A stretch of DNA of 64,000 bases from Podarcis muralis (taxonomy: Eukaryota): positions 51,522,001-51,586,000 of the forward strand of contig NC_135664.1 of assembly GCF_964188315.1 (NCBI RefSeq), written 5' to 3'. Under the pieces are notes generated by a model. It did no database searches. It was not told where the DNA came from and worked only from the letters and a program-made list of their open reading frames with translations. This document shows positions 16,630 through 62,030 of the stretch, one piece after another. Both the position numbers and the translations under genes were made by a program. Positions within the stretch are counted from its first letter, which is position 1; the number at the start of each line of letters is the position of its first letter.

Positions 16630-16681
<52 letters not shown>
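16630..16681. repeat. (TAA)n microsatellite
   Basis: Directly visible. Confidence 0.97.
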
Positions 16682-25897: not shown

Positions 25898-27226
25898 CCC
25901 TGCCCCCAATTCTGAAACATCCTTCCATAACAGGCCGCCGTGAAGTTCATTCTCAGCATGTAAACTTGAATGTTGCCTTTAATCACCAATAGCTTCCTCT
26001 GGATAATTGCTACTCCCTGACAGTGCATCAATGTGCATCAAACAACACATGCAGCCTCCATATTGCTGCCCACATGATTGCACTAGGGAGCCTGCATGCA
26101 CAACTGTCTTTGGGCCTCTTCCGGCATTACTTTGCAGCATGTGAACCAATTCAGAATGTGTCCCTTCTGTGCTACTCTGGTAACGAGAAGTTCATTATGC
26201 AATTACTTCCCATACCAATGCTGCAACTCCAGCAGGAAATAGGGCACTGCTGGACCCACATCCTGGGCTCTTGCAATGTGGCCTAGATCTTCTAACAATC
26301 CAAATGATGCAAAGGGGACACAGACTGCAGCAGCCCTTCTTATATCAGTAGAAGTCTATGGTCTTCCTCCTAGCCTTAAAGAGCCAGAAACTCTTTGAAG
26401 GATGAAGGGGAAATTGAGAGAGCAGATCTTACAGATGAGATGTGGATATCAATCTGCATGAGAACTGCATAAACAATCAGTAATAGAGAAGTGAAAGGAT
26501 AGCTGTTTGAAATTAATGAGCCAATTTTCTCCCATTGTGAAACTCAAATAAAATCAGTGACATACTGGCATGGCACAATATATGAATGTGACCCAGAAAT
26601 GTCTAGCTAATTTCAAATTACCATTCTTTCACTTCATCTGCTTTTAATGTATCAATCCATATGAATATATAATATTATTTAGATTATAACCTTCAAGACT
26701 GGGGAGGCTTCACATTTTAATATTTTGTTAAATATATAGCCAGCAAACCTGTTAAAGCTGGAATGAAGATTGTCTGACAAAAGGAAATGCATAGTATGGT
26801 CTCTGACCCATCAATTATCATTTCTTGAAATCCACAGAGAATTGATGAGATTCCAAAAGGAAGTAATGCTATGTAGGTCAAATGTACTGCACTAGAAAAG
26901 TGCTCAATTTATCAAGGTTCTAGGAATACTTGTTATATATTAAAGTGTCACATTGTTGTAGCTGCTACAACAGCAAAGGTGTACAAACAAGAGCATAGCT
27001 TTTTATGTAAACCTTCTCAAGGTCAGTGGTAAAATGCTTAATTAAATTCTGTTCTTTAAACTCTGTCCCCATGGAAATATAAGGCTGCACACCTATATTT
27101 GCACTGGATGAAGCTTCATTTAACTCAGTGAAGCTTACATCTGAATAGACAAATACAGACTGAGTTGAAAAATAACTCCATAGCCATGCAGTGCAATCCT
27201 ACCCATATCTACAGAGAAGTAAGACT

Positions 27227-28980
27227 GCAGATAAAAATGATCACCCTCCCAAAACTAACCTACCCATTCCAAACCCTCCCAATCTGGATTCCCCCAACCC
27301 AACTCCGTAAATGGCAGAAAAAACTACATACCTGCACCTCCCCTCCTCCCCTCCTCCGAGAGAGGATGGGGAATCCCCAACATATAAGCATATTACATTG
27401 CCAACCAAGTGTGCCACATAATCCTATGTATACTAGAAGATGAGACAAAACAATGGATACATCTAGAGAGGGACACAGTTGAAAACACCTACACCACAGC
27501 ATACCCATTCCTCTCAAACAAACTAAGGAAAATTCCCACAAAACTTAACAGGTACACCCAGACCATGCTTAAAGCATGGAAAGCAAAAATAGGTAAACTG
27601 TCCCCAACCTCATCCCCATCCCCACTAATTCCCCTGGCATACCATCCATTATTCCATCACGCAGCACAAAACCTCCAAATAAAAACCTGGCAAACCAAAG
27701 GCCTATATCGCCTAACAGACTTCTATAAAAATAACAAACCCTTATCAACACAAGAAATACAAGACAAACTAGAAGACACCCAAATGCCCTGGTTAACACA
27801 ACACCAACTACATGCCCTCTTAAACAATCCAGTAGTAAAATCAGCAACAGCTAGGCCCATGACAACCTTTGAAAACCTCCTCCTAACAACAAAGGGACAC
27901 GGCAAAGAGATGGTATCCGCAATATACAAATTACTACTCCAAAACCCCATGAACCCCCTAGACGTAATCAAAAAACAATGGGAGGACGACATAGGCTATG
28001 AGATTAACACCACTCAGTGGACCAGAATGTGGCCTAAACCCCCTTTAAATCCATATCAACGAAAAGGAAAGAATTTACTCTAAAACTCACCTACAGGTAG
28101 TACCTAACGCCAAGGCAATTAGCTCTAATACACCCAGGAACCTTAACAAAATGCCGGAGAGGGTACACCTCCACAGGCACATACTTCCACATGTGGTGGG
28201 AATGCCCCAAAATCCAACTATTCTGGACAACATCCATAAAATAAATATGCAAAATAAGTAAGCAAGTATTGTATTAGAAATAACCCCAGAACTGGCCATA
28301 TTAAACATCTTCCAAGACAATAATGCCCACTCACATCACAAAGAACTTATAACCCAAATACTCTCAGCAACCAGAAACATCATAACCAGACACTGGAGAG
28401 ACCTGTCAGGAGTAAGCATGGACCAACAGTACGAAACAGTATGGGAAACAGCCTTACTAGAAAAATTAACCAATAAATTGAAACTGAGACGGGGACAAAT
28501 AGAAGAAGACACCTTCACCCCAGTATGGCTCCCCTTTGTCACATACACAGCCCAACAAGACAATGACAAGAATCCACCAACAGCATATGAATCAATATGG
28601 CTAACCTGATCCAAAACATCCACCCACCCCACTCACACATGAAAACAAAGTTCACCACAGCCAATCACAAACAAACAACCACACCCTAGGCCAACCCCAA
28701 CCTCTCTCACCACTAAAGGAACACAAGCAAATAGCAAAGAGAACCTGCACAAGCGATGCTGACACAAAACCCCACACATACATTAAGTAAAATAGAAACT
28801 TCGCCACCCGACCCCACCCCCACTCACCATTCCCCATTCCACCTCTTTCCCCCTTTTCTTCCTAATGTAACACTAATGTCTCAACAAATGAAACTGATCT
28901 GTAGAAAATGTAACTTGAAAAAAGAGACATTGCACATACTACTGTAAACCAAGAAATCTTTAATAAAAATACATTAAAAA
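27227..28980 (+). mobile_element. 5'-truncated L1/Tx1-clade LINE, 3' part of ORF2 plus 3' UTR
   Basis: Post-RT peptide IKMITLPKLTYPFQTLP, ORF 27409-28083 and further broken frames, decayed C-terminal zinc knuckle (KCRRG...GTYFHMWWECPKI), stop at about 28609, AATAAA at 28962-28967, A-rich tail, TSD GAAGTAA(G/A)ACT at 27216-27226 and 28981-28991. Confidence 0.88.
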
Positions 28981-30689
28981 GAAGTAAAACTATTGAGTTC
29001 ACTAAGACTTGCTGAGTGTGTGCATGCATGTATAGGATACTTACGACCTTAATTTTGTGTATCTATATGTATATACAGTATAGCAGTATAGATGAAAACA
29101 GAGGCTAATCTAAATGGTTCAGCTTCTAAATGTGACAAGTGAATTGAATTGATCATAAAAACTGCCCAGTAGCCAGAGAACAGAACAAATTCCCTGTTAC
29201 TCATCTTAGGGTACAAAACTCCTATATGTCCATATACTTCCTTAACTAAGAATAAGGCTGTGCACACACCATACAATTCAGTCACATTGCCTCCCCCGAA
29301 GAAGCATGAGAACTGTAGTTTGTTTTTGGGAATTCTGTGAAGGATGCATAAGACATGCATAAAATTGCTCTATTAAGTTTTGTTCTCTCTCCACACTTGC
29401 AACTTTAAAAAAGGAACATAAGTTACCAATATACCAAGTCTTACTAATTGCCTATCAATCATGACAATGCTTTCTCTGACAGACAGCAGCTCCCTAGGTC
29501 TCAGGCAGAACTATTCCCCAGTGGAAAAGATGAGGATGCTAAGGCCAGGACATTAAGCATGCAAATAATGTACTGCATTACTCAGCTAAGGTCAATCTGC
29601 ATCCTTACAGACAAGTCACCATGAAACCCATAAGCCCATCATAAACCTGCATCTTTCTGTTACTGCTGACTCCCCACAACCAAAACCCCACCCACCACTT
29701 TGAAGGCACGCACAATGCAAAAAGACAACACAAAAGGGTTATTTTTATAGCTGGGATGGGGAACCTGTGCCCCTTCAAATGTTGGACTCCAACTCCCATC
29801 AGCCCCAACTCATGGTTTTATAAACTTATACATATGTGTCCTACCAAGACAAAAAGCAATATGTCTTTTCAGTCACTATTAACAGGGAATAAATGTGGCT
29901 GGAAGACAATGAATTCAATATAGTTCAGTTTGACTCAACAAACCACTTCAAAGTTTGAGGAGCTACATGGCTTATCTTTAAATAATATGTGCTCATGACA
30001 CAGCACTGTGTAATTTCAAGCACAGAGCAACTCTGTTAAGTGTCTGAACACTTCTGTGACATATGTTGAAGGCAAATGAATAATGGTGGATAGAAGAAAT
30101 ATGGGGGAGAACGATCTCTACAACATAACTAGCCAAACGGGCTGTTCATATGATATTTTGGACCAGCTCCCCACTTATAGAACTTCCAACTGAGATTAGA
30201 TTTTCCCCAGTACTGCGGAAGTTTCAGCATTGCTTAAAGACATATAAACTTGCTGGGCATTTGGTGGTTAGCTGTAGGTCTTGCTTTGCTGCTGTGTTTT
30301 TAAAAGTTTATGTTGATTTGTTCTTATTTTAACTGTTATTTTATGATATTTGTATGATGTTACGACATTTGTATGGCTTTACTATTCTTGTTAGCTGCCC
30401 TACGGCCCAGTAAGATGAAGGATTGGGTAGAAGTACAATGAATGAATGAATAATAGTAAATAAACAAACCAAAACTGTGAGAAAATCTGTAGGTGTGGTG
30501 TGAGTTCAAAGAGCTCATCTTGGCTTGGCTCAGGAAATGATGGGCAGTAATGGGACAGTAATGATCAGCCTTTACTCTAACAACCCAGCCTGTCACAACC
30601 ATCGGCTCAAATGTTTGCGTAACTCTTGCCCTCAGTATCCCAGATATTGCCTTGTTAAAAATATTTTACTGTGAAGTTGGTCGAATGAC

Positions 30690-34035: not shown

Positions 34036-34549
34036 CTCTAGGAAATCTTTTACAGTAGCAACTTTCTTTCACAACAGGACTGTGATTCACAGTGCCTTCT
34101 TAGGGCTGGGAGGACTCAAGGGAAGACTCAAGCTTTACTTCTTTACTTTTGTGCGTTTTACAGAAGACCGATCAACAGGAATCGGCAGATGAAACTTCAT
34201 GGCATGGAAAGAACATCATCACCTGCTAAGGTCTGCAGGTCGAGCTGTCATTAAGACGGTAGAACAAAAGAGTAGGCAAAAACAAAACAAAAAGTAAGTA
34301 GTCCTAGCTATGATAAGATGATGTCTTCTGTCTCGAGCTCCAGACATTCCTTTGGATCAATATGATGAACCATAGCTACAACAGCTGTTAGTAATTTTCC
34401 ACTTCTGGGCTTGCAAGTCTTCTTTGCAGATAGCTCAAAAGTGACAGAAGTCAGAACTGGATCAGGGTGCAGGTAGAGAAGAAAAAGACAGTATGAGCAA
34501 ATCCCTTTCGCTGACAGATGCCTGTCCTGTATCAGCTATATTTTATTGC

Positions 34550-34594
<45 letters not shown>

Positions 34595-35330: not shown

Positions 35331-35381
<51 letters not shown>

Positions 35382-43465: not shown

Positions 43466-43996
43466 GTGAGATCACATTCATCCGGTGCTATACCAGCTGC
43501 ACTGGCTCCCGGTGGAGTACAGGATCAGGTATAAGGTGCTGGTTTTAACCTTTAAAGCCCTTTACGGCATAGGACTCTCGTACCTACGGGACCGCCTCTC
43601 CTGGTATGTCCCACGGAGGAACTTACGATCTTCAAACAAAAACATCCTGGAGGTCCCAGGCCACAGAGAGGTTAGGCTGGCCTCAACCAGAGCCAGGGCT
43701 TTTTTGGCTGTGGCTCCGATCTGGTGGAACGCTCTGCCACAACAGACTAGGGCCCTGCGGGACTTGACATCTTTCTGCAGGGCCTGCAAGACAGAGCTGT
43801 TCCACCAGGCCTTTGGCCAGGGCACAGCCTGACTCCCTCCTTTGGCAATCTTCACAGAACTCTAGCCCAATGGTTGCCATCAATTTGATTTGAATTAATT
43901 TTATAATTAAATGATTTTAGAATGCTGCATTATTTTATTGTTGTTGGCCGCCCTGAGCCCGGCTTCGACTGGGGAGGGCGGGATATAAATAAAAAA

Positions 43997-44043
<47 letters not shown>
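43466..44043 (+). mobile_element. L2 LINE 3' end with (TTA)n tail
   Basis: Peptide LHWLPVEYRIRYKVLVLTFKAL...YLRDRL...RAF..VAPIWWNALP...KTELF (ORF 43485-43832), then GGGCGGGATATAAATAAA and a TTA run. Confidence 0.9.
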
Positions 44044-53741: not shown

Positions 53742-54607
53742 TCAACATGCCAGGCTAAGGCTGATAGGCGCTTTAGTCCAAAAGTAGGGCAACAGGTTAG
53801 CAAAGGCTGCCATACTCCGTTATAAAAACAACAACAACCATCACAAAAACAGCAAAGCAGCTGCCTTAAAAAAAAGAAAAGTATCAGAAGGTGCAAACAA
53901 AGGAAATCAAGGTAAGCAGAGAACAAAAGCTACCCAAAACAAAAAGAGGGTGATAAATGGATCTCTGAAAACCAAGAACTCTACAGTCTGTGCACTGCTA
54001 CTAAGTATGCCTATTTTGTATGTCTACCAGAAAGGTCTGTCCTGTTGGTTACATTTATCAGCAATAAGTCCTTTAAATATATTAGTCCCAAGTCGTAATC
54101 AGCACTTTGAATGGTGCCCAAAAATTGTTAGGCAGCCCATGAAATCAATTCGTGTTTTGTTTTATTCATTACTGTTTGTATCCTGGCTTTCTACCAATGG
54201 CACCCAACTCTGTAAACAATACAGTAAAGCACACATCTACAATACAGTAACAACAGTAGTACACAAAAGAGCAGCACAGAAGTGGAGAGGCAGAAACCAA
54301 AAAGACTGAAATGGGTTAAACAGAAGCAACCAAGTGAGGGCAGCTGTTTTTAATTTTATAAAGAACTGCCTTGGCAGAATCTTCATTATGATGAAATACA
54401 CCTTTATTCCTTCATCAGATATTTGAATGGAAAAGATACATTGTACTTGTTCAGGGTGAAAACATGATTAATGCAATTCCAATTTTGTGCCAATTCCTTG
54501 ATCTACTACCTTATGTTCCATACCTGTACCTGAACCAAAGAGTTTCTGGTGTATGAATTTAGCCATGAATCAGGGTGATATATGGGGCAGAAACCTCCCT
54601 TTTGGTA

Positions 54608-55053
54608 TCATGGAACTTTGGAGTGTCAGGCATAGCCCTACTGGCTTTAGCCCAAACGTAGCAGAGTTTTCCTGCACAGCGAGGAAGCTAGTTGCGGCGG
54701 TAATGACTAGTCAGCTAGACTCAGAATAACTATTTACAGGATTTATTAAAAGGAGAAAATAAAACCAGCAGAGTTTCTGCATACAAAACAAAGCAAAATA
54801 AACCCTCTCTTTCTCTATCTCTCAAAACCGTACACAGCACTTCTACTCCTAACAACACCTCACTTCAAACTGAGCTAGCAAACCCTTGATAACAGAGTTG
54901 AGTGCTGGTCGTTAACCAATCAGAGTAGTTTCTAGGTCAGGCAGACCTGGGCTTTCTGCCAAGAGTAAATTGACACCACCTTGAGTTAATTGTGAGAAGC
55001 TAGAATCTGCAAGTTTCCCACGAGAACCAATTAACTGAAACTGAAACTGAACA
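54608..55053 (-). repeat. 3' LTR of the Copia element (446 bp)
   Basis: Preceded on the minus strand by the PPT GAGGGGG. Near-identical to the 5' LTR. Minus-strand AATAAA at 54742-54747. Confidence 0.97.
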
Positions 55054-55060
55054 CCCCCTC
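55054..55060 (-). promoter_or_regulatory. Polypurine tract GAGGGGG
   Basis: Plus-strand ccccctc lies directly against the 3' LTR start. Confidence 0.9.
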
Positions 55061-55106
55061 ACAGATTCTGCTGAACAATTAACACCAAATACACCTATGT
55101 AGAAGA

Positions 55107-58100
55107 TCATTTTTCCAGCAAACCTAAACCCTTGCACATTCGCTTGTTCTTTATCTTTGCCAGTGGTTTAGTTAATACATCTGCTACATTTTCTTCACTT
55201 GATACATAAGTACAGGTGATTACATTGTCTTGTACACAGCAACGTACATTTTGGTATTTTACAGAGATATGTTTGGAACGCGATTTGAAACCCTCTGTTT
55301 TACTTAATGTTATACAAGCTTGATTATCAATGTAAACTTGTACTGGTTCTCCACAATTTACATTTAAATCTGCTAACAAATGCTTGAAATAAATCACCTC
55401 GTTGCACAATTCACTCAATGCGGCGTACTCTGATTCCGTTGATGACACACTTACAACGTCTTGCTTGCGTGACCGCCAGCTGATTAAAGCTCCACCGACC
55501 ATTATGACTAGTCCTGTGACAGATTTTCTATCCGGCAAATTTCCCCAGTCACTATCACAGTAGCAACTCAACATTTCATCCTCTGAAGAATTTAATTGTA
55601 ACATATAGCCAATTGTCTGTTTGAGATATCTCAGAACTTGTTTTACCCCTTTCCAGGCATTTAGTGTGGGTTTTGAGACCAATCTACTTAATATGCCTAC
55701 TGCATAGCTAATATCAGGTCTGGACCACTGTGCTAGATACAATAAACTTCCAATTACAGAATGATATACATCAGGATGTTCAAATTCAGGACCCTCATCT
55801 ATATGAAGTGTTTTTATGAAACCTGGATCCATAGGCACCACTGCCCCTTTGCAATCCTGCATCCTGTATGTAGTCAGTAGTTGTTTAACTTTGTTCTGCT
55901 GACTAATTAGGCAGCTGCCATCTTGGGCCCAGCACACTTCCAACCCTAGATATGTCCTAACCGGGCCTAAGTCTTTCACTTTGAACTTACTGGACAATTG
56001 TTTGGCAAACCTTTTAGTTTGTTTATCTGTTTTGCATGCATACAAAACATCATCTACATAAATCAGACAAAACTCTTGATCACTGCCTGTACCACGTACA
56101 TAAACACAATTGTCAGCTGTACTCTGCTTGAAACCAAATGACACTAAGGCCTCATGGAAACATTTGTTCCAAGATCTTGCAGCCTGTTTGAGACCGTATA
56201 GAGCTTTGTTTAATTTTAACACTCTATTGGAACCTGTCTCATAACCAGGCGGTTCGGCTAGATACAGGTCTTCTGATATTGGTGCATGTAAATATGCAGT
56301 CTGAATATCAAAATGGTTTAACAGGAGTTTTCTCTTTGCTCCAAGTGTTAAAATCAGCCTTACACTGTCCCCCTTAGCAGTAGGGGAAAAAGTCTCGTCA
56401 TAATCTTTTCCAGGCCTCTGAGAGTATCCTTGAGCCACTAAACGAGCTTTGTATTTGTACTCTCCTGTCACCAGAGGTTTAAGTTTGTACACCCACCTGC
56501 AGCCTACAATCTTTGCCCCCTCAGGCGCTGCTACTGGTGTAAAAACCTTGTGCTCATTCAGAGAGGACATCTCTTCCTCCATTGCCTGTTTCCAGAGCTC
56601 TGCCTCCTCTTTTGGTAACTTTAACACTTCCTGAAAACTCTTGGGTTCTGCAATTACACTAAACACATTTGCAGTATCTGGGGAAAAACGCACCGGAGGC
56701 ACTCCTTTGTTTTGTCTTTTAGATCTTCTGGGAGAAAATTTTTCTTCTGACCCACTTTCCTCCTCAGAACTACGACCTCTCTTTTGTTGCATAGCAACTG
56801 GTCTTTGGCTAACTCCACTTTCTTGAGAGCTCTTATCTGAACTTTCCTCCCCCTCAGACTCTGACTCTCTGTGTTTACCTTCAGAGTCATGAAGCTCCTG
56901 GGAAGGTTCAAACCAAACCTCAGTATTGGCATGTAGTCTCTCCCAGCCACTATGTTCACAAAAACTGGCATTCCTGGAGATCACAATGCCATTTGTCCCT
57001 TCAGCAAAACGGAAACCTTTTCCCAGCTCCTGGTAACCCACAAACACTAACTGTTTGGTCTTAGGATCTCCCTTCCTCCTCATTTGTTTTGGAATTAATA
57101 CCCAGGCCTTTGATCCAAACACATGCAAATGGTCAATTTTGGGTTTTTTCTGAAACAATTTAAAGTACGGGGTTGTACCTATTGTTTGATGAAAGAGCCT
57201 GTTTTGGAGATAACACGCGGTGAGCATGCTCTCCCCCCAATAAGACATGGGCAAATCAGCATCTTCAAGCATGGCAAACATCATATCTTGTAAAGATCTG
57301 TTTTTTCGCTCTGCAACGCCATTCTCCTCTGGGGAAAAAGCATTCGTTTTTCTATGCCCAATGCCACGCTTTTGTAACCAATCTTTAAAAGCATTTGACA
57401 TAAATTCGCCACCTCTGTCCGTCTGAATCCTTTTGAGTTTAATGGACAGAAATCTTTCCACAGATGCCACCCAGCCTTTAAACTTAGTGAACACGTCACC
57501 CTTATTCTTCATGGGGAAAACCCAGGAGTAACGCGTGGCGTCATCCACAATTGTTAGTGAAAAGCGCGATCCACCCCTGCTTACAGCAAATGGACCAATT
57601 ACGTCCATGTGAACCAGCTGTAGCGGTGACTCACTAACTCTGTCACTTCTGGGGTAAGAGACTCTGTGGGTTTTAACCTTTTTACACACATTACAATCAA
57701 GGTACTTGTTACAACTCTTTAAATTACCCCCATCAGCCAATTCAGACATTTTTAGTACACTTTTCCAGCAAGCATGCCCCATTTTCCTATGCAATAAGTG
57801 CACACAGTTGTCATGTATAGCTTTGTTATTCACTGCAGGCTGAGATTTACTGACTACTGCTGCAACTTGAGATCCTGCTTTAAGCCAAAACAAGCCTCCC
57901 TCTGACTTAGCAGTGCCTAAAATCTCACCAGCCTTCTTAATAATGCAACTGTCTCCTTCAAAATACACTTTAAACCCAGCTTTTAGCAAACAATCTACAG
58001 ACATCAGATTGCTCCTTAATGACGGCACACAAAGTACATTTTGCAGGCATTCACGAAGACAAGGAACAAAAACTGCACCCCCCGAAATCACTTCGGAAGT

Positions 58101-59069
58101 ACTTCCGTCTGCTAGAGCCACCTGGCTACGCTGTGCTGAGTTCTTGGAAACAAACAATTCATCTGAATTCACGATGTGGCGAGATGCTCCCGAATCGATC
58201 ACCCAGACCGCTTGTTTCTCATCAGCAATCTTGACCTCGCCGGTCACCAGCTGAGCCGACTGTTTTTGTTTGAAGAATTTCTTTTTACGCTGCTGCTGCT
58301 GCTGATCTCGTCTCTGCTCCTGCACCGGCAACTGAGACTTGACCAACTCCGGACATTGTCGTTTTAGATGCGCTGAAGACCCACATCGGAAACAACGCCT
58401 AACAGCAAACGCTGACTTCTCACCGGTACGCTGCTTTTGCTTCACCTCTGGCACGGCCTGAGAACTCCTTCCAAACCGCCCACCTGTAGAAGCCTCTGCA
58501 GCCAACGACCTTTCTTGCCTCTTCTGCCATTCTTCAATCAAACGCCCAGTAACGTAACTGACTGATAAATCATGCTCCTGCATGCCTTCTAGAGACAAAA
58601 CTAAATTATCCCAGCTTTCCGGGAGAGAACTCAAAATAATAGCCACCTTCTCCTGCTGGTCTAACGCACAGTCTCTTTCCTGTAGCGCAGCAAACTTTAA
58701 CTGTAAACTGTGTAGGTGTTCCTGCATTGTAACCCCAGGCTGTAACATTGCCTTGTACAATGCCTTGTGAATGAACAGCTTGGAAACCGCTGTCTCACGC
58801 ACATGGAGTTCTTTAAGTGCTTGCCACACACCTCTAGCTGTCTTGATTCCCCTCACATACGGCAACTGGGAATCTTCCAGCCCCAAGACAATTGTGGCCC
58901 TTGCTCTTTGGTCTTTATCGAGGTCTTCATCATCAGGCTTTGCAGGAAACTTACTCACCACTTGCCAGAGACGATCCCTCTGCAGCACTGCCTGCATGCG
59001 TTCCGACCACAGCAAGTAATTGGAGTCATTCAGACGCTCAAAAGCCATCTGAACTGGTTGTGAGGCCAT
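55107..59069 (-). CDS. gag-pol: Copia gag-pol polyprotein, 1320 aa, no stops or frameshifts
   Basis: ATG in strong Kozak context (AAGATGG). Gag N-terminus (LNDSNYLLWSERMQAVL), CCHC knuckle CFRCGSSAHLKRQC, protease VIDSGASRH. Integrase zinc finger (HRKMGH...CNVC), DDE residues (HMDVIGP, QTDRGGEF, NGVAER), GKGF motif. RT motifs YKARLVAQGYSQ, DIQTAYL, YVDD. RNase H motifs CDSDWG, EYAAL, IDNQA, ADVLTKPL. Confidence 0.97.
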   Translation of the reverse strand: MASQPVQMAFERLNDSNYLLWSERMQAVLQRDRLWQVVSKFPAKPDDEDLDKDQRARATIVLGLEDSQLPYVRGIKTARGVWQALKELHVRETAVSKLFIHKALYKAMLQPGVTMQEHLHSLQLKFAALQERDCALDQQEKVAIILSSLPESWDNLVLSLEGMQEHDLSVSYVTGRLIEEWQKRQERSLAAEASTGGRFGRSSQAVPEVKQKQRTGEKSAFAVRRCFRCGSSAHLKRQCPELVKSQLPVQEQRRDQQQQQRKKKFFKQKQSAQLVTGEVKIADEKQAVWVIDSGASRHIVNSDELFVSKNSAQRSQVALADGSTSEVISGGAVFVPCLRECLQNVLCVPSLRSNLMSVDCLLKAGFKVYFEGDSCIIKKAGEILGTAKSEGGLFWLKAGSQVAAVVSKSQPAVNNKAIHDNCVHLLHRKMGHACWKSVLKMSELADGGNLKSCNKYLDCNVCKKVKTHRVSYPRSDRVSESPLQLVHMDVIGPFAVSRGGSRFSLTIVDDATRYSWVFPMKNKGDVFTKFKGWVASVERFLSIKLKRIQTDRGGEFMSNAFKDWLQKRGIGHRKTNAFSPEENGVAERKNRSLQDMMFAMLEDADLPMSYWGESMLTACYLQNRLFHQTIGTTPYFKLFQKKPKIDHLHVFGSKAWVLIPKQMRRKGDPKTKQLVFVGYQELGKGFRFAEGTNGIVISRNASFCEHSGWERLHANTEVWFEPSQELHDSEGKHRESESEGEESSDKSSQESGVSQRPVAMQQKRGRSSEEESGSEEKFSPRRSKRQNKGVPPVRFSPDTANVFSVIAEPKSFQEVLKLPKEEAELWKQAMEEEMSSLNEHKVFTPVAAPEGAKIVGCRWVYKLKPLVTGEYKYKARLVAQGYSQRPGKDYDETFSPTAKGDSVRLILTLGAKRKLLLNHFDIQTAYLHAPISEDLYLAEPPGYETGSNRVLKLNKALYGLKQAARSWNKCFHEALVSFGFKQSTADNCVYVRGTGSDQEFCLIYVDDVLYACKTDKQTKRFAKQLSSKFKVKDLGPVRTYLGLEVCWAQDGSCLISQQNKVKQLLTTYRMQDCKGAVVPMDPGFIKTLHIDEGPEFEHPDVYHSVIGSLLYLAQWSRPDISYAVGILSRLVSKPTLNAWKGVKQVLRYLKQTIGYMLQLNSSEDEMLSCYCDSDWGNLPDRKSVTGLVIMVGGALISWRSRKQDVVSVSSTESEYAALSELCNEVIYFKHLLADLNVNCGEPVQVYIDNQACITLSKTEGFKSRSKHISVKYQNVRCCVQDNVITCTYVSSEENVADVLTKPLAKIKNKRMCKGLGLLEK

Positions 59070-59316
59070 CTTGAGAGCGATGTCCCTGGAACCCGGAACC
59101 AGCTACTCACGACCACCGAGAGAGAAAACAGGAACCACAGCACCCAGCACTCACACGCTGCAGCTGTTGTCCTTGTGTCCGCTGCGTCACCAGCTCACCA
59201 CGGTCAGGAACCAGCCAGAGTCCATCTGCTGCACCAGCAGGAACAACAACTTCTGGAACTACTGGAACCAACGCCGTTGATGCTGACACCACCGCAACTC
59301 AGGCTGGCAGCACAAT

Positions 59317-59326
59317 GCCCATAACC
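59317..59326 (-). promoter_or_regulatory. Primer-binding site GGTTATGGGC (half initiator tRNA-Met type)
   Basis: Abuts the 5' LTR. Complementary to GCCCAUAACC in the anticodon arm of initiator tRNA-Met, as in Drosophila copia. Confidence 0.85.
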
Positions 59327-59772
59327 TCATGGAACTTTGGAGTGTCAGGCATAGCCCTACTGGCTTTAGCCCAAACGTAGCAGAGTTTTCCTGCACAGCG
59401 AGGAAGCTAGTTGCGGCGGTAATGACTAGTCAGCTAGACTCAGAATAACTATTTACAGGATTTATTAAAAGGAGAAAATAAAACCAGCAGAGTTTCTGCA
59501 TACAAAACAAAGCAAAATAAACCCTCTCTTTCTCTCTCTCTCAAAACCGTACACAGCACTTCTACTCCTAACAACACCTCACTTCAAACTGAGCTAGCAA
59601 ACCCTTGATAACAGAGTTGAGTGCTGGTCGTTAACCAATCAGAGTAGTTTCTAGGTCAGGCAGACCTGGGCTTTCTGCCAAGAGTAAATTGACACCACCT
59701 TGAGTTAATTGTGAGAAGCTAGAATCTGCAAGTTTCCCACGAGAACCAATTAACTGAAACTGAAACTGAACA
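59327..59772 (-). repeat. 5' LTR of the Copia element (446 bp)
   Basis: Minus strand begins TGTTCAG and ends CCATGA, immediately followed by the PBS. Matches 54608-55053 except one base (C at 59536 vs A at 54817). Confidence 0.97.
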
Positions 59773-61985
59773 TGGTATTCTAAAAATTCAGAGTATGTCT
59801 GAGCTTTCAACAAAGGGAAATAATCTTATCTACCTCCTTTGCTTTTAGGTTTTGTTCTTATCTTCTGAAAAGATGTTTACACTTCATGCAAGCCTTCTAA
59901 ACACTATTATTCTTTTAACATAAGATAGCATTGTACTGTTTGGCAATAAATTAAGCCAAATGCAGGAGTATCCAATAAGACAAGATTCATTATTATAACC
60001 ACTAACTAGCTCTACTATGAACATGCTGCCAATCCTATGCACACTTATATTGCAGCAAAACTCATTGAACCAGTTCAATATCTGAGTAAACACACATAGG
60101 ATTGTACTGTAAGACTTAGCTACCTCCAAAATCCAGGGTTAATGCACCAGTGTTGTGATGTTAAGTAACGCTATAGCACAGAAAGCTTTGCAAATGCTAA
60201 GCCTGAACGATCAAGGCAACCTCCATTGCAAGAACATGCCACTGCAATACAGATAGTGTATTCTACCAAAGGGTAGAAGAGCTCTTGTAACTTTATACAA
60301 GGGAGCTTCAGTGAGTGCAACTCATCATGCAGGGATCAGGAAAGCTGTGACTGCTGAATTTTCCTCTACTTCTGCACAATGATTAAGAGGTACAGAATCT
60401 CTGGTCTCATTGCATCTGGTGATTCTAACAATAAGCTTTGCATGAGCTGAGCTGCTAGATTGAAGGAGAACTCTTTGTATGATGAAATCAACAAATATTG
60501 TAAGAGGTAAGTATGTTAAAATTAGAATGTACATATAATGGCATGGCCAATGGAAATTGTAGTCCAACAACATCTGGAGGGTTCTGTCTTACAAATAAGG
60601 GAAGATTGACTATGGCGAGGTACGTGCATTGAGTAGCAGCTAGCATTACTCTTGACCATTCATAAATATTAGAGAAAGCTGCAACAGAGATGGTGTGATC
60701 ATGGTCCATTGTAATCAGTGGAAGTCTTGCCATTGATTCTAGTGACAGATGGACTCTTACTGTTAATTGCATGCACTATTATTTCACACTAGCTAAATTT
60801 GATTAGAAGGGATGGGAAGATTCTACTCCTTACCTGAATCCTTCTGCTCTACCCCTCACCCTCCCATCCATCAATGAAGTCATGCCCTAGAATTGCCATG
60901 CAGGGTTGGGACAGTGAGCTAGCAAGCATAATCTTGTCACATGCTGCTTTTTCATTTCCCCCATAGGAATGAATATTAACCATTCACTTATACGGCATGA
61001 GCTAAGGGATACAGCTAAACCTTGCCCTGGTGATCCATGAATGTAAAATGAGAAGGTCCTCCTTTCAGCTGTGTCTCATAATGCTACTTGCTTATCTGTT
61101 GCACCACCAGAGCCATTACGAACTAAGCTAAACTGTATATGGATGGTCTTGTGTTTGGCCGTCTGGACAAAGCTAAGCCACAAGCCCTGGCTTAGGTGAC
61201 ACACTAAGCCAAACCATGGTCTAAGATCAGCACAGGAGCAGAATGACTGGAGAGGAGCAAAGCAGCGACAATCTCCTCACCGGAAGCCTGAACATTGGCT
61301 CATTCATGCTAGGTTTGGCTTCGTGTTATGTGCAAACTGGGCCATAATAACAAAAGGAAAGCTAACACTGTACAGTGTTAAACATGAGTCGGTCATTATG
61401 AAATATCCTTTTGTGCCCTTTAGAAGAATCTTAAAATACAACAGAGTATCAGAACAAGAGATTCCAATCAGTTGCTTCAATTTGGTTCCCTTGATTTCAC
61501 CATTCTGCACCTTGGCTTGTTCAGATTCTGGTTTTGCCTCCCAAGGTTTATATCAGAAGGGTACATCTCTTGGTGGAGGTGAGACACACATAATAATGCA
61601 AACACAGCTTAGATCCCATTGAACGTGAAAGCTCATACCGCAGCCCTGCACCTACAGTATGCATGCATCTGAATAACATACTGTAATGCCTTTCCCATTA
61701 TGAAGCTGTCTGGATTTGTTGGCAGGGAGGAGAAGCATTACAGTTTGGTTGGACACCTTTTTTAAAAGATGAAAAACTATCCCAGGGAGGCTGATGCATC
61801 AGCTTTGTTGCATCTTCTGTGCCTGAAGCTTTCAGTAAACAAGCAGCGACATGAATGAAATCTCCCAGCAAAAGACTGCGTTGAGCAGCTCCCACGTAAC
61901 AAAATTTTATTTCTCCTCTCTCTCTCTCTGTCTCTCAGCTTCAGTTACAGTTCTACCATTTCCTGTGGAAAAACGAAGGCTTTTG

Positions 61986-61986
<1 letters not shown>

Positions 61987-62026
<40 letters not shown>
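61987..62026. repeat. (GT)n microsatellite
   Basis: Directly visible. Confidence 0.97.

Positions 62027-62030
<4 letters not shown>

What the first reader, a model, noticed from the sequence alone, without database searches (positions are those of the whole stretch)
54608..59772. Structurally complete, probably still mobile Copia retrotransposon in an amniote genome
Seen: 446-bp LTRs with one mismatch by eye (54817 vs 59536, inside a CT repeat), a perfect 5-bp TSD, and a 1320-aa ORF with recognisable protease, integrase DDE, RT YVDD and RNase H motifs. Known: LTRs are identical at insertion, and Ty1/Copia elements are absent or rare in birds and mammals and little studied in squamates. Inference: a very recent insertion from a live family, possibly polymorphic in the population.
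Basis: partly seen in the sequence, partly recalled or inferred. Interest (0 to 1): 0.8.

Follow-up and report, generated by a model that had tools for sequence, protein, structure and literature searches.

The report
Young polymorphic Copia retrotransposon, wall lizard
This is a real, complete and very young copy of a roughly 200-copy Copia "jumping gene" family in a wall lizard; other individuals and a sister species lack this insertion, so the family moved recently, but active Copia elements were already known in lizards and snakes.

Summary
The element lies on the minus strand at 54608-59772. It has two 446-bp LTRs with one mismatch, a 5-bp TGGTA target duplication, and one open 1320-aa gag-PR-IN-RT-RNaseH frame with all catalytic motifs.

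New evidence:
- **Polymorphic insertion.** The exact empty site, with one TGGTA, occurs in another individual of the same species, in one read of a third individual, and in a related species.
- **Large family.** About 165-215 copies at 93% identity or more; 30% of reads match this copy at 99% or more.
- **Purifying selection.** dN/dS is 0.10-0.16 between three intact ORFs.
- **Host.** Podarcis lilfordi proteins are 97% identical, so the host is a lacertid wall lizard or close kin.
- **Isolation.** Outside that cluster the nearest proteins are 45% identical or less, inside an animal-dominated Copia clade. Nothing points to recent horizontal transfer.
- **Ends.** The unusual TG...GA LTR ends are shared by the whole family.

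Current transcription is not shown: 12 weak reads in one RNA run.

Copia activity in squamates is already published (green anole insertion polymorphisms, sea-snake expression). First readers of this scan also flagged other intact young Copia copies on other DNA of this genome. Verdict: real, recently active, a new member of a known kind, moderate interest.

The parts
54603..54607 (.). Target-site duplication TGGTA, left copy (downstream of the element in element sense)
   Evidence: The empty-site joint 54602->59773 keeps a single copy.
54608..55053 (-). 3' LTR in element sense, 446 bp. Element-sense ends are TG...GA. AATAAA lies at LTR positions 307-312 (window 54742-54747).
55054..55060 (-). 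Polypurine tract GAGGGGG, directly upstream of the 3' LTR
   Evidence: Conserved in family contigs L002, L003 and L004.
55107..59069 (-). Single gag-pol ORF of 1320 aa plus stop
58506..58997 (-). Copia-type Gag (PF14223, aa 25-188). The CCHC knuckle is at aa 226-239 (window 58353-58394).
57972..58205 (-). Aspartic protease region (Pol_BBD, aa 289-366; DSGA at aa 292-295)
57309..57791 (-). Integrase: HHCC zinc finger (aa 427-462) and catalytic core with D489, D551 and E587
55830..56549 (-). Reverse transcriptase (RVT_2, aa 841-1080; YVDD at aa 1004-1007)
55155..55547 (-). RNase H region (about aa 1175-1305); boundaries are approximate
   Evidence: Motifs read from the translation. No separate Pfam hit.
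59317..59326 (-). Primer-binding site GGTTATGGGC, directly after the 5' LTR. Read as complementary to the anticodon stem-loop of initiator tRNA-Met (half-tRNA priming).
   Evidence: Conserved in L002 and L003. The same core follows the LTR in the nearest outgroup contigs L001 and L005. The tRNA match rests on a recalled tRNA sequence.
59327..59772 (-). 5' LTR in element sense, 446 bp
59773..59777 (.). Target-site duplication TGGTA, right copy

Best explanation
This is a full-length autonomous Ty1/Copia LTR retrotransposon, 5165 bp, on the minus strand. It inserted recently into single-copy DNA of a lacertid wall lizard (Podarcis or close kin) and still segregates as a presence/absence polymorphism. 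It belongs to a family of roughly 165-215 copies that was retrotransposing recently and may still be. Inferred mechanism: the 5' LTR drives a genomic RNA. One 1320-aa Gag-PR-IN-RT-RNaseH polyprotein is translated and cut by its own protease. Minus-strand DNA synthesis is primed on the 10-nt PBS by a 5' fragment of initiator tRNA-Met, as in Drosophila copia and yeast Ty5. Plus-strand synthesis starts at the GAGGGGG tract. The integrase inserts the cDNA with a 5-bp staggered cut and tolerates a non-canonical GA at the U5 end. Shown here: structure, intact coding capacity, insertion polymorphism, copy number, and selection between copies. Inferred: transcription, priming, and present-day activity.
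For: Structure: LTRs match at 445 of 446 positions, the 5-bp duplication is perfect, and PBS and PPT abut the LTRs. Coding: an open 1320-aa ORF with six Copia Pfam domains in the order gag-PR-IN-RT and all catalytic motifs. Polymorphism: the joint 54602->59773, skipping 5170 bases (element plus one TGGTA), appears in one X33 contig (same species; k-mer depth 16.3 against 17 for the neighbouring flank contig), in one X44 read (same species), and in one X37 contig (related species B; flanks about 2.5% diverged). Copy number: X44 raw WGS gives a mean internal depth of 226 against about 1-1.7 in the flank. That equals about 165-215 copies for a 1.4-1.8 Gb genome. Of 8043 laid reads, 2392 are 99% or more alike. 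About 150-170 clipped reads at each LTR end carry unrelated flanks, so there are many independent insertion sites. Selection: among the 37 best-supported variable ORF sites, 23 are synonymous and 14 are not (binomial p = 1e-7 against neutral site proportions; for the counts, for the test). Pairwise dN/dS is 0.10-0.16 between this ORF and two other intact 1320-aa ORFs, P0268 and P0269. Youth: CpG observed/expected is 0.44 in the element against 0.21 in the rest of the window. Host: Podarcis lilfordi proteins CAI5789482.1 and CAI5797341.1 are 97% identical to the Gag N-terminus. Priming precedent: anticodon-loop tRNA-iMet priming in copia and Ty5 (PMC10886601, its refs 37 and 38).
Against: No read-level confirmation of the filled allele outside the assembly was obtained. 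The one bulk RNA run laid (X23) gave 12 reads, none 99% or more alike, so expression is unproven. Whether the long family contigs L002 and L003 come from RNA or from low-coverage DNA cannot be decided; their ends fall at indel-variable LTR sites. The tRNA match to the PBS uses a tRNA sequence recalled from memory. The copy number depends on an assumed genome size and a very shallow flank depth. The selection signal could come partly from contigs that blend several copies.
Confidence: 0.9

Rival explanations
1. The family is now silent or extinct. This copy is a leftover of the last burst, drifting as a neutral polymorphism in a large population, and nothing transposes today.
For: Bulk RNA run X23 has only 12 reads on a family of about 200 copies, none 99% or more alike. 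At a dozen or more sites this copy differs from over 90% of family reads, so its own sublineage is small. Polymorphisms can persist for a long time in large populations.
Against: The LTRs are identical apart from one change in a slippage-prone CT tract. 30% of reads are 99% or more alike. At least three intact ORFs are under strong purifying selection. Junction-read counts fit about one pair of LTR ends per internal copy, so solo LTRs appear few (rough estimate). Germline tissue was not examined.
Confidence: 0.35
2. The insertion is old and fixed, and its LTRs look identical only because of gene conversion or assembly collapse.
For: None found.
Against: The precise empty site with a single TGGTA exists in the same species and in a sister species. 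LTR-LTR recombination would leave a solo LTR, not a clean empty site.
Confidence: 0.02
3. The element reached the lizard lineage recently by horizontal transfer from a distant host such as an arthropod or a fish.
For: Sequence gap: nothing lies between 98% (own family) and 45% identity in two very large protein libraries.
Against: No donor-like sequence exists. The nearest non-lizard sequences are 41-45% identical over RT-RNaseH, with path lengths of 1.5-1.8 changes per site. The family is multi-copy in at least two species plus P. lilfordi. Synonymous divergence between copies (2.4-5.7%) is of the same order as the 2.5% host flank divergence, which fits vertical persistence. Vertebrate transposon proteins are poorly represented in these libraries, so the gap is weak evidence.
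Confidence: 0.05
4. Assembly artefact: a family copy was wrongly placed at this locus.
For: No independent filled-site read was seen. All three other data sets examined show the empty allele.
Against: An exact 5-bp duplication at exact LTR ends in single-copy flanks is the signature of integration, not of misassembly.
Confidence: 0.03

Closest known systems
Podarcis lilfordi annotated proteins CAI5789482.1 and CAI5797341.1 ('Retrovirus-related Pol polyprotein from transposon TNT 1-94')
   Same: Same family: 97% amino-acid identity over the first 263-269 residues of Gag.
   Different: They are 274-282 aa gag-only models. Their tails match the +1 and +2 reading frames of this element after an A-rich tract at the gag/protease boundary, so those copies or their assemblies are frameshifted.
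Drosophila copia and yeast Ty5 (Ty1/Copia, Pseudoviridae)
   Same: Gag-PR-IN-RT-RNaseH order, 5-bp target duplication, and a PBS that pairs with the anticodon stem-loop region of initiator tRNA-Met rather than its 3' end (PMC10886601, refs 37 and 38).
   Different: Not aligned directly here. Named insect Copia in the tree are 35-41% identical in RT-RNaseH. This family has LTR ends TG...GA instead of TG...CA and a vertebrate host.
Copia insertions in other squamates: green anole (1962 polymorphic Copia calls, PMC7561263 Table 1) and hydrophiine snakes (Copia expanding and expressed, PMC8872380)
   Same: Young, polymorphic or expressed Copia elements in squamate genomes. [quoted passage not shown]
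   Different: Sequence relationship not testable here (no Repbase or Dfam access). This one is in a lacertid, and no paper on Copia in Podarcis was found.
Unnamed metagenome contigs L001 (P0001) and L005 (P0277)
   Same: Nearest non-lizard relatives, forming a 100/100-supported clade with the lizard family. They share the PBS core GGTTATGG(G) directly after the LTR and are CpG-depleted.
   Different: Only 41-45% identical in RT-RNaseH. Their LTRs end in the canonical CA. Their hosts are unknown.
Metazoan Copia clades GalEa, Hydra and CoMol (PMC8556966, PMC2774666)
   Same: Animal Copia lineages. Hydra and GalEa include fish elements.
   Different: Clade membership could not be tested because no reference sequences were available through the tools.

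Membership tests
Ty1/Copia superfamily (Pseudoviridae) | Integrase upstream of reverse transcriptase (gag-PR-IN-RT-RH order) | tested here: met
   Pfam hits in order: gag_2 25-188, Pol_BBD 289-366, rve 481-579, RVT_2 841-1080.
Ty1/Copia superfamily (Pseudoviridae) | Copia-type RT (PF07727 RVT_2) with a YxDD active site | tested here: met
   RVT_2 E = 1.2e-67; YVDD at aa 1004.
Ty1/Copia superfamily (Pseudoviridae) | Copia-type Gag with CCHC knuckle | tested here: met
   PF14223 E = 4.7e-33; C-x2-C-x4-H-x4-C at aa 226.
Ty1/Copia superfamily (Pseudoviridae) | 5-bp target-site duplication | tested here: met
   TGGTA on both sides; the empty allele keeps one copy.
Ty1/Copia superfamily (Pseudoviridae) | LTR ends TG...CA (usual, not strictly defining) | tested here: not met
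   Element-sense ends are TG...GA. The GA end is shared by about 150 clipped junction reads from other copies and by contigs L002 and L003.
Ty1/Copia superfamily (Pseudoviridae) | No env gene | tested here: met
   Only 53 nt lie between the stop codon and the 3' LTR. No further sense-strand ORF of 100 aa or more lies inside the element.
copia/Ty5-type half-tRNA priming | PBS complementary to the anticodon stem-loop of initiator tRNA-Met | tested here: inconclusive
   The 10-nt PBS is conserved in the family and in the outgroups. The tRNA sequence was recalled, not supplied by a tool. ARAGORN found no tRNA gene in the window.
Recently or currently active retrotransposon family | Insertion polymorphism with a precise empty site | tested here: met
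   Joint 54602->59773 in X33, X44 and X37.
Recently or currently active retrotransposon family | Several near-identical copies and other intact ORFs under purifying selection | tested here: met
   30% of reads are 99% or more alike. P0268 and P0269 are intact. dN/dS is 0.10-0.16. Synonymous to non-synonymous sites are 23:14.
Recently or currently active retrotransposon family | Full-length sense transcripts | tested here: inconclusive
   12 reads in bulk RNA run X23, none 99% or more alike. Tissue unknown. The six small runs that hold 60-61% of the stretch's words are only guessed to be RNA.
Recently or currently active retrotransposon family | De novo insertions or extrachromosomal cDNA | not testable with these tools
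   Needs pedigree or eccDNA data.
Metazoan Copia clades (GalEa / Hydra / CoMol / insect clades) | Monophyly with clade reference RT-RNaseH sequences | not testable with these tools
   No reference sequences were available. The tree only places the family in an animal-dominated clade with two unnamed sequences.

The most novel reading that the evidence does not exclude
The family is transposing today in wall lizards, which would make it one of the few demonstrably live Ty1/Copia families in an amniote. Its integrase would work on a non-canonical GA terminus. Its proteins would mobilise in trans the RT-deleted derivatives seen in the reads and the RT-less Copia lineages that other first readers noted in this genome.
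Probability: 0.3. Interest if true: 0.55.

Novelty: new member of a known kind. Interest (0 to 1): 0.35.

Why it matters
Ty1/Copia elements were lost in birds and mammals, so squamates are the amniotes in which their biology can still be studied. A well-defined autonomous family of about 200 copies, with segregating insertions in a much-sequenced wall-lizard group, offers three things. It gives ready presence/absence markers. It is a natural system for studying Copia control (piRNA, methylation) in an amniote. It is a candidate helper for the non-autonomous Copia lineages noted elsewhere in this genome. It does not change the known picture: active Copia in squamates is already documented.

Tried and rejected
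- **Rfam.** A permissive E-value scan of 54500-59900 gave only chance-level hits (E >= 0.85).
- **tRNA genes.** ARAGORN found none in the window, so no tool-supplied tRNA-iMet was available for the PBS test.
- **Host genes.** Pfam on the ten other longest ORFs in the window gave nothing, so no host gene was found to identify the organism directly.
- **Full-length protein search.** It missed the element's own family because the cluster representative is a 461-aa fragment outside the length filter. The exhaustive representative search recovered it.
- **Protein atlas.** It returned only generic Copia clusters with no useful taxa.
- **Naming top hits.** The long top hits are a scatter of pseudoscorpion, green alga, fungus and mosquito at 33-37% identity, which gives no clade label.
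- **Earlier scan findings.** The look-up by sequence was blank.
- **Transcript ends.** I tried to read them from contigs L002 and L003. Their ends coincide with indel-variable LTR sites, so they are graph breaks, not RNA ends.
- **RNA run X23.** It gave no support for expression.
- **Alternative boundary parse** (element shifted by one base, duplication ATACC). Rejected because the two LTR copies then disagree at their first base.
- **Literature.** No paper on Copia in Podarcis was found.
Full report
**1.
- A direct-repeat search finds one repeat pair in 54000-60400.
- Base-by-base comparison shows 446-bp LTRs at 54608-55053 and 59327-59772. Their single difference is 54817 A versus 59536 C, in a CT-rich tract. 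TGGTA lies immediately outside both ends.
- The only long ORF runs on the minus strand from 59069 to 55107, 1320 codons without a stop. The element is therefore read right to left.
- In that sense the 5' LTR is 59327-59772 and the 3' LTR is 54608-55053.
- The LTR-start 30-mer occurs only at the two LTRs (0 expected by chance). No other copy or fragment lies in the 64-kb window.

**2. Anatomy.**
- Pfam places Retrotran_gag_2, DUF4219, Pol_BBD, rve, SH3_retrovirus and RVT_2 in the Ty1/Copia order.
- The translation carries all expected motifs:
  - a gag CCHC knuckle at aa 226
  - protease DSGA at aa 292
  - an integrase HHCC finger at aa 427-462, with D489, D551 and E587
  - RT YVDD at aa 1004
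  - the RNase H acidic residues
- Directly after the 5' LTR lies GGTTATGGGC. From my memory of the vertebrate initiator tRNA-Met sequence, this is complementary to its anticodon stem-loop. That is the copia/Ty5 style of priming by a 5' tRNA fragment (PMC10886601, citing Kikuchi 1986 and Ke 1999).
- Directly before the 3' LTR lies the purine tract GAGGGGG.
- The PBS, the PPT and both LTR edges are conserved in three independent family contigs. The PBS core recurs after the LTR in the two nearest outgroup contigs.
- The LTR has AATAAA at positions 307-312 and no canonical TATA box.
- Only 53 nt separate the stop codon from the 3' LTR, so there is no env.

**3. The LTR ends are TG...GA, not TG...CA.**
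- Shifting the boundary by one base makes the two LTR copies disagree, so the parse is firm.
- The GA end belongs to the whole family. About 150 reads from other copies are clipped exactly there and continue into unrelated flanks (table 7). L002 and L003 show the same end before the PBS.
- The nearest outgroups end in CA.
- This agrees with an earlier first-reader note on this window (s1-188942).

**4. The insertion is polymorphic and derived** (all).
- I laid four runs on 54300-60100. A joint from 54602 to 59773 skips exactly the element plus one TGGTA.
- X33, same species: the joint appears in one contig. Its k-mer depth is 16.3, against 17 for the neighbouring flank contig, which suggests a homozygous empty site.
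- X44, same species, raw WGS at about 1x: the joint appears in one read.
- X37, a related species: the joint appears in one contig. Its flanks differ from the window at 16 of 631 positions, about 2.5%.
- A clean empty site cannot come from LTR-LTR recombination. Its presence in the sister species shows that absence is the ancestral state.
- I did not obtain independent reads of the filled allele, so the assembly is the only witness of presence. The exact duplication in single-copy flanks makes an artefact very unlikely.

**5. Age.**
- One difference in 446 bp gives K = 0.22% (Poisson 95% interval 0.006-1.25%).
- Scaled to the 2.5% flank divergence between the two species, the insertion is about 9% as old as their split (interval 0.2-49%).
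- The single difference lies in a tract that also varies by 2-bp indels between copies (table 4), so it may overstate the age.
- CpG observed/expected is 0.44 in the element against 0.21 in the rest of the window. This fits little time under methylation decay.

**6. The family is large and young.**
- In X44, mean internal depth is 226 against about 1-1.7 in the flank. For a 1.4-1.8 Gb genome this means roughly 165-215 copies at 93% identity or more.
- Of 8043 reads, 30% are 99% or more alike, 63% are 95-99% alike, and 7% are 90-95% alike.
- Junction-read counts at each LTR end (about 150-170) match the number of internal copies, so solo LTRs appear few. This is a rough inference.
- The related species also carries the family. 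Its contigs are 1-2.4% different, with k-mer depths 50-80 times that of the flank.
- At a dozen or more sites, over 90% of family reads differ from this copy, so it belongs to a minor sublineage.

**7. Selection.**
- Among the 37 best-supported variable ORF sites, 23 are synonymous and 14 are not. The ORF has 849 synonymous and 3111 non-synonymous sites, which gives p = 1e-7.
- The exhaustive representative search found a 98% identical fragment, P0123. Its 90% cluster holds two further intact 1320-aa ORFs, P0268 and P0269, on 4.5-kb Logan contigs L002 and L003.
- Those contigs are 97.8% and 98.3% identical to this element at the DNA level.
- Pairwise dN/dS between the three ORFs is 0.10-0.16, with dS of 2.4-5.7%.
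- The differences therefore accumulated mostly along replicating lineages, not by decay after insertion.
- Caveat: the contigs may blend several copies.

**8. Host.**
- Run and organism names are coded. The same 90% cluster holds two Podarcis lilfordi proteins that are 97% identical to this Gag.
- The host is therefore a lacertid wall lizard or close kin. An earlier follow-up in this scan also calls this genome a lizard.

**9. Relatives and horizontal transfer.**
- Outside the Podarcis cluster, the best hits in libraries of 5.8 and 1.84 billion proteins are 38-45% identical.
- In a maximum-likelihood tree of RT-RNaseH, the lizard family groups with 100/100 support with two unnamed metagenome sequences. 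Path lengths to them are 1.5-1.8 changes per site.
- That group sits inside a 100/100 clade that also holds nematode, mosquito and wasp elements. It is separate from a clade dominated by plant, fungal and oomycete elements.
- No donor-like sequence exists. The family is shared by at least three congeners. Horizontal transfer is not needed, though the libraries hold few vertebrate transposon proteins.
- Assignment to GalEa, Hydra or CoMol could not be tested.

**10. Expression is not shown.**
- Bulk RNA run X23 gave 12 reads, none 99% or more alike.
- Six small runs that hold 60-61% of the words of the stretch are only guessed to be RNA.
- The ends of L002 and L003 fall at indel-variable LTR sites. 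They are assembly breaks, not transcript ends.

**11. What is known.**
- Copia is retained in fish, amphibians and reptiles and lost in birds and mammals (PMC4350176).
- The green anole has 1962 catalogued polymorphic Copia insertions (PMC7561263, Table 1).
- Copia subfamilies are expanding and expressed in hydrophiine snakes (PMC8872380).
- I found no paper on Copia in Podarcis.
- First readers of this scan have flagged other intact young Copia copies, and RT-less Copia lineages, on other pieces of this genome. I did not verify those.

**12. Verdict.**
- It is a new member of a known kind. Its points of interest are the family-wide GA terminus, the half-tRNA PBS shared with its deep relatives, and a possible helper role for deleted derivatives.
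Those steps are referred.

Noticed in passing
window 55963-56510 (RT domain, minus strand): X44 reads show at least six different internal deletions of 238-466 bp, each in 4-9 reads at about 1x coverage, with 1-7 nt of microhomology at the joints. One X37 contig shows a further 538-bp deletion. None of the lengths is a multiple of three. This suggests RT-deleted derivatives that have themselves multiplied, perhaps mobilised in trans (table 5).
   Followed up: partly
window 58262-58290 (gag/protease boundary, aa 261-270): This is an A-rich tract. The two annotated Podarcis lilfordi gag-only proteins (274 and 282 aa) leave the frame here, and their tails match the +1 and +2 frames of this element, each stopping within about 15 codons. 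This could be homopolymer assembly error, decayed copies, or a hint of how Gag excess is made. Untested.
   Followed up: partly
window 59379-59410 and 59480-59494 (5' LTR); the same motifs at 54660-54691 and 54761-54775: The LTR carries two copies of a motif ending in CTCTGCT (element sense). The longer copy, 53-84 nt upstream of the PBS, resembles the complement of the 5' end and D arm of initiator tRNA-Met as I recall that sequence. Other first readers noted tRNA-iMet-like segments in Copia LTRs of this genome (s1-189834). Not tested against a tool-supplied tRNA.
   Followed up: no
window 55033-55053 and 59752-59772 (U3 start in element sense): This copy has TTTCAG twice after TGTTCAG. Contigs L002-L004 have a single unit, which reads TTTCTG, and about 20% of X44 reads at 55033 lack one 6-bp unit. 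So the hexamer copy number varies at the very edge of the LTR.
   Followed up: partly
L001:300-340 and L005:220-250: The nearest non-lizard relatives sit on metagenome contigs from two sibling ENA assemblies. They are CpG-depleted (observed/expected 0.36-0.43), which suggests a CpG-methylating host of unknown identity. They share the PBS core but have canonical CA LTR ends.
   Followed up: partly
window 26001-30000: Strong strand asymmetry: GC skew -0.19 to -0.24 and AT skew +0.18 to +0.23, unlike the rest of the window. The 224-aa ORF at 27409-28083 has no Pfam hit. Unexplained.
   Followed up: no
window 16630-16680, 34539-34593, 35332-35381, 43996-44043, 61988-62027: Perfect or near-perfect microsatellites: (TAA)17, (TAT)19, (TGC)17, (ATT)16 and (GT)20.
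   Followed up: no
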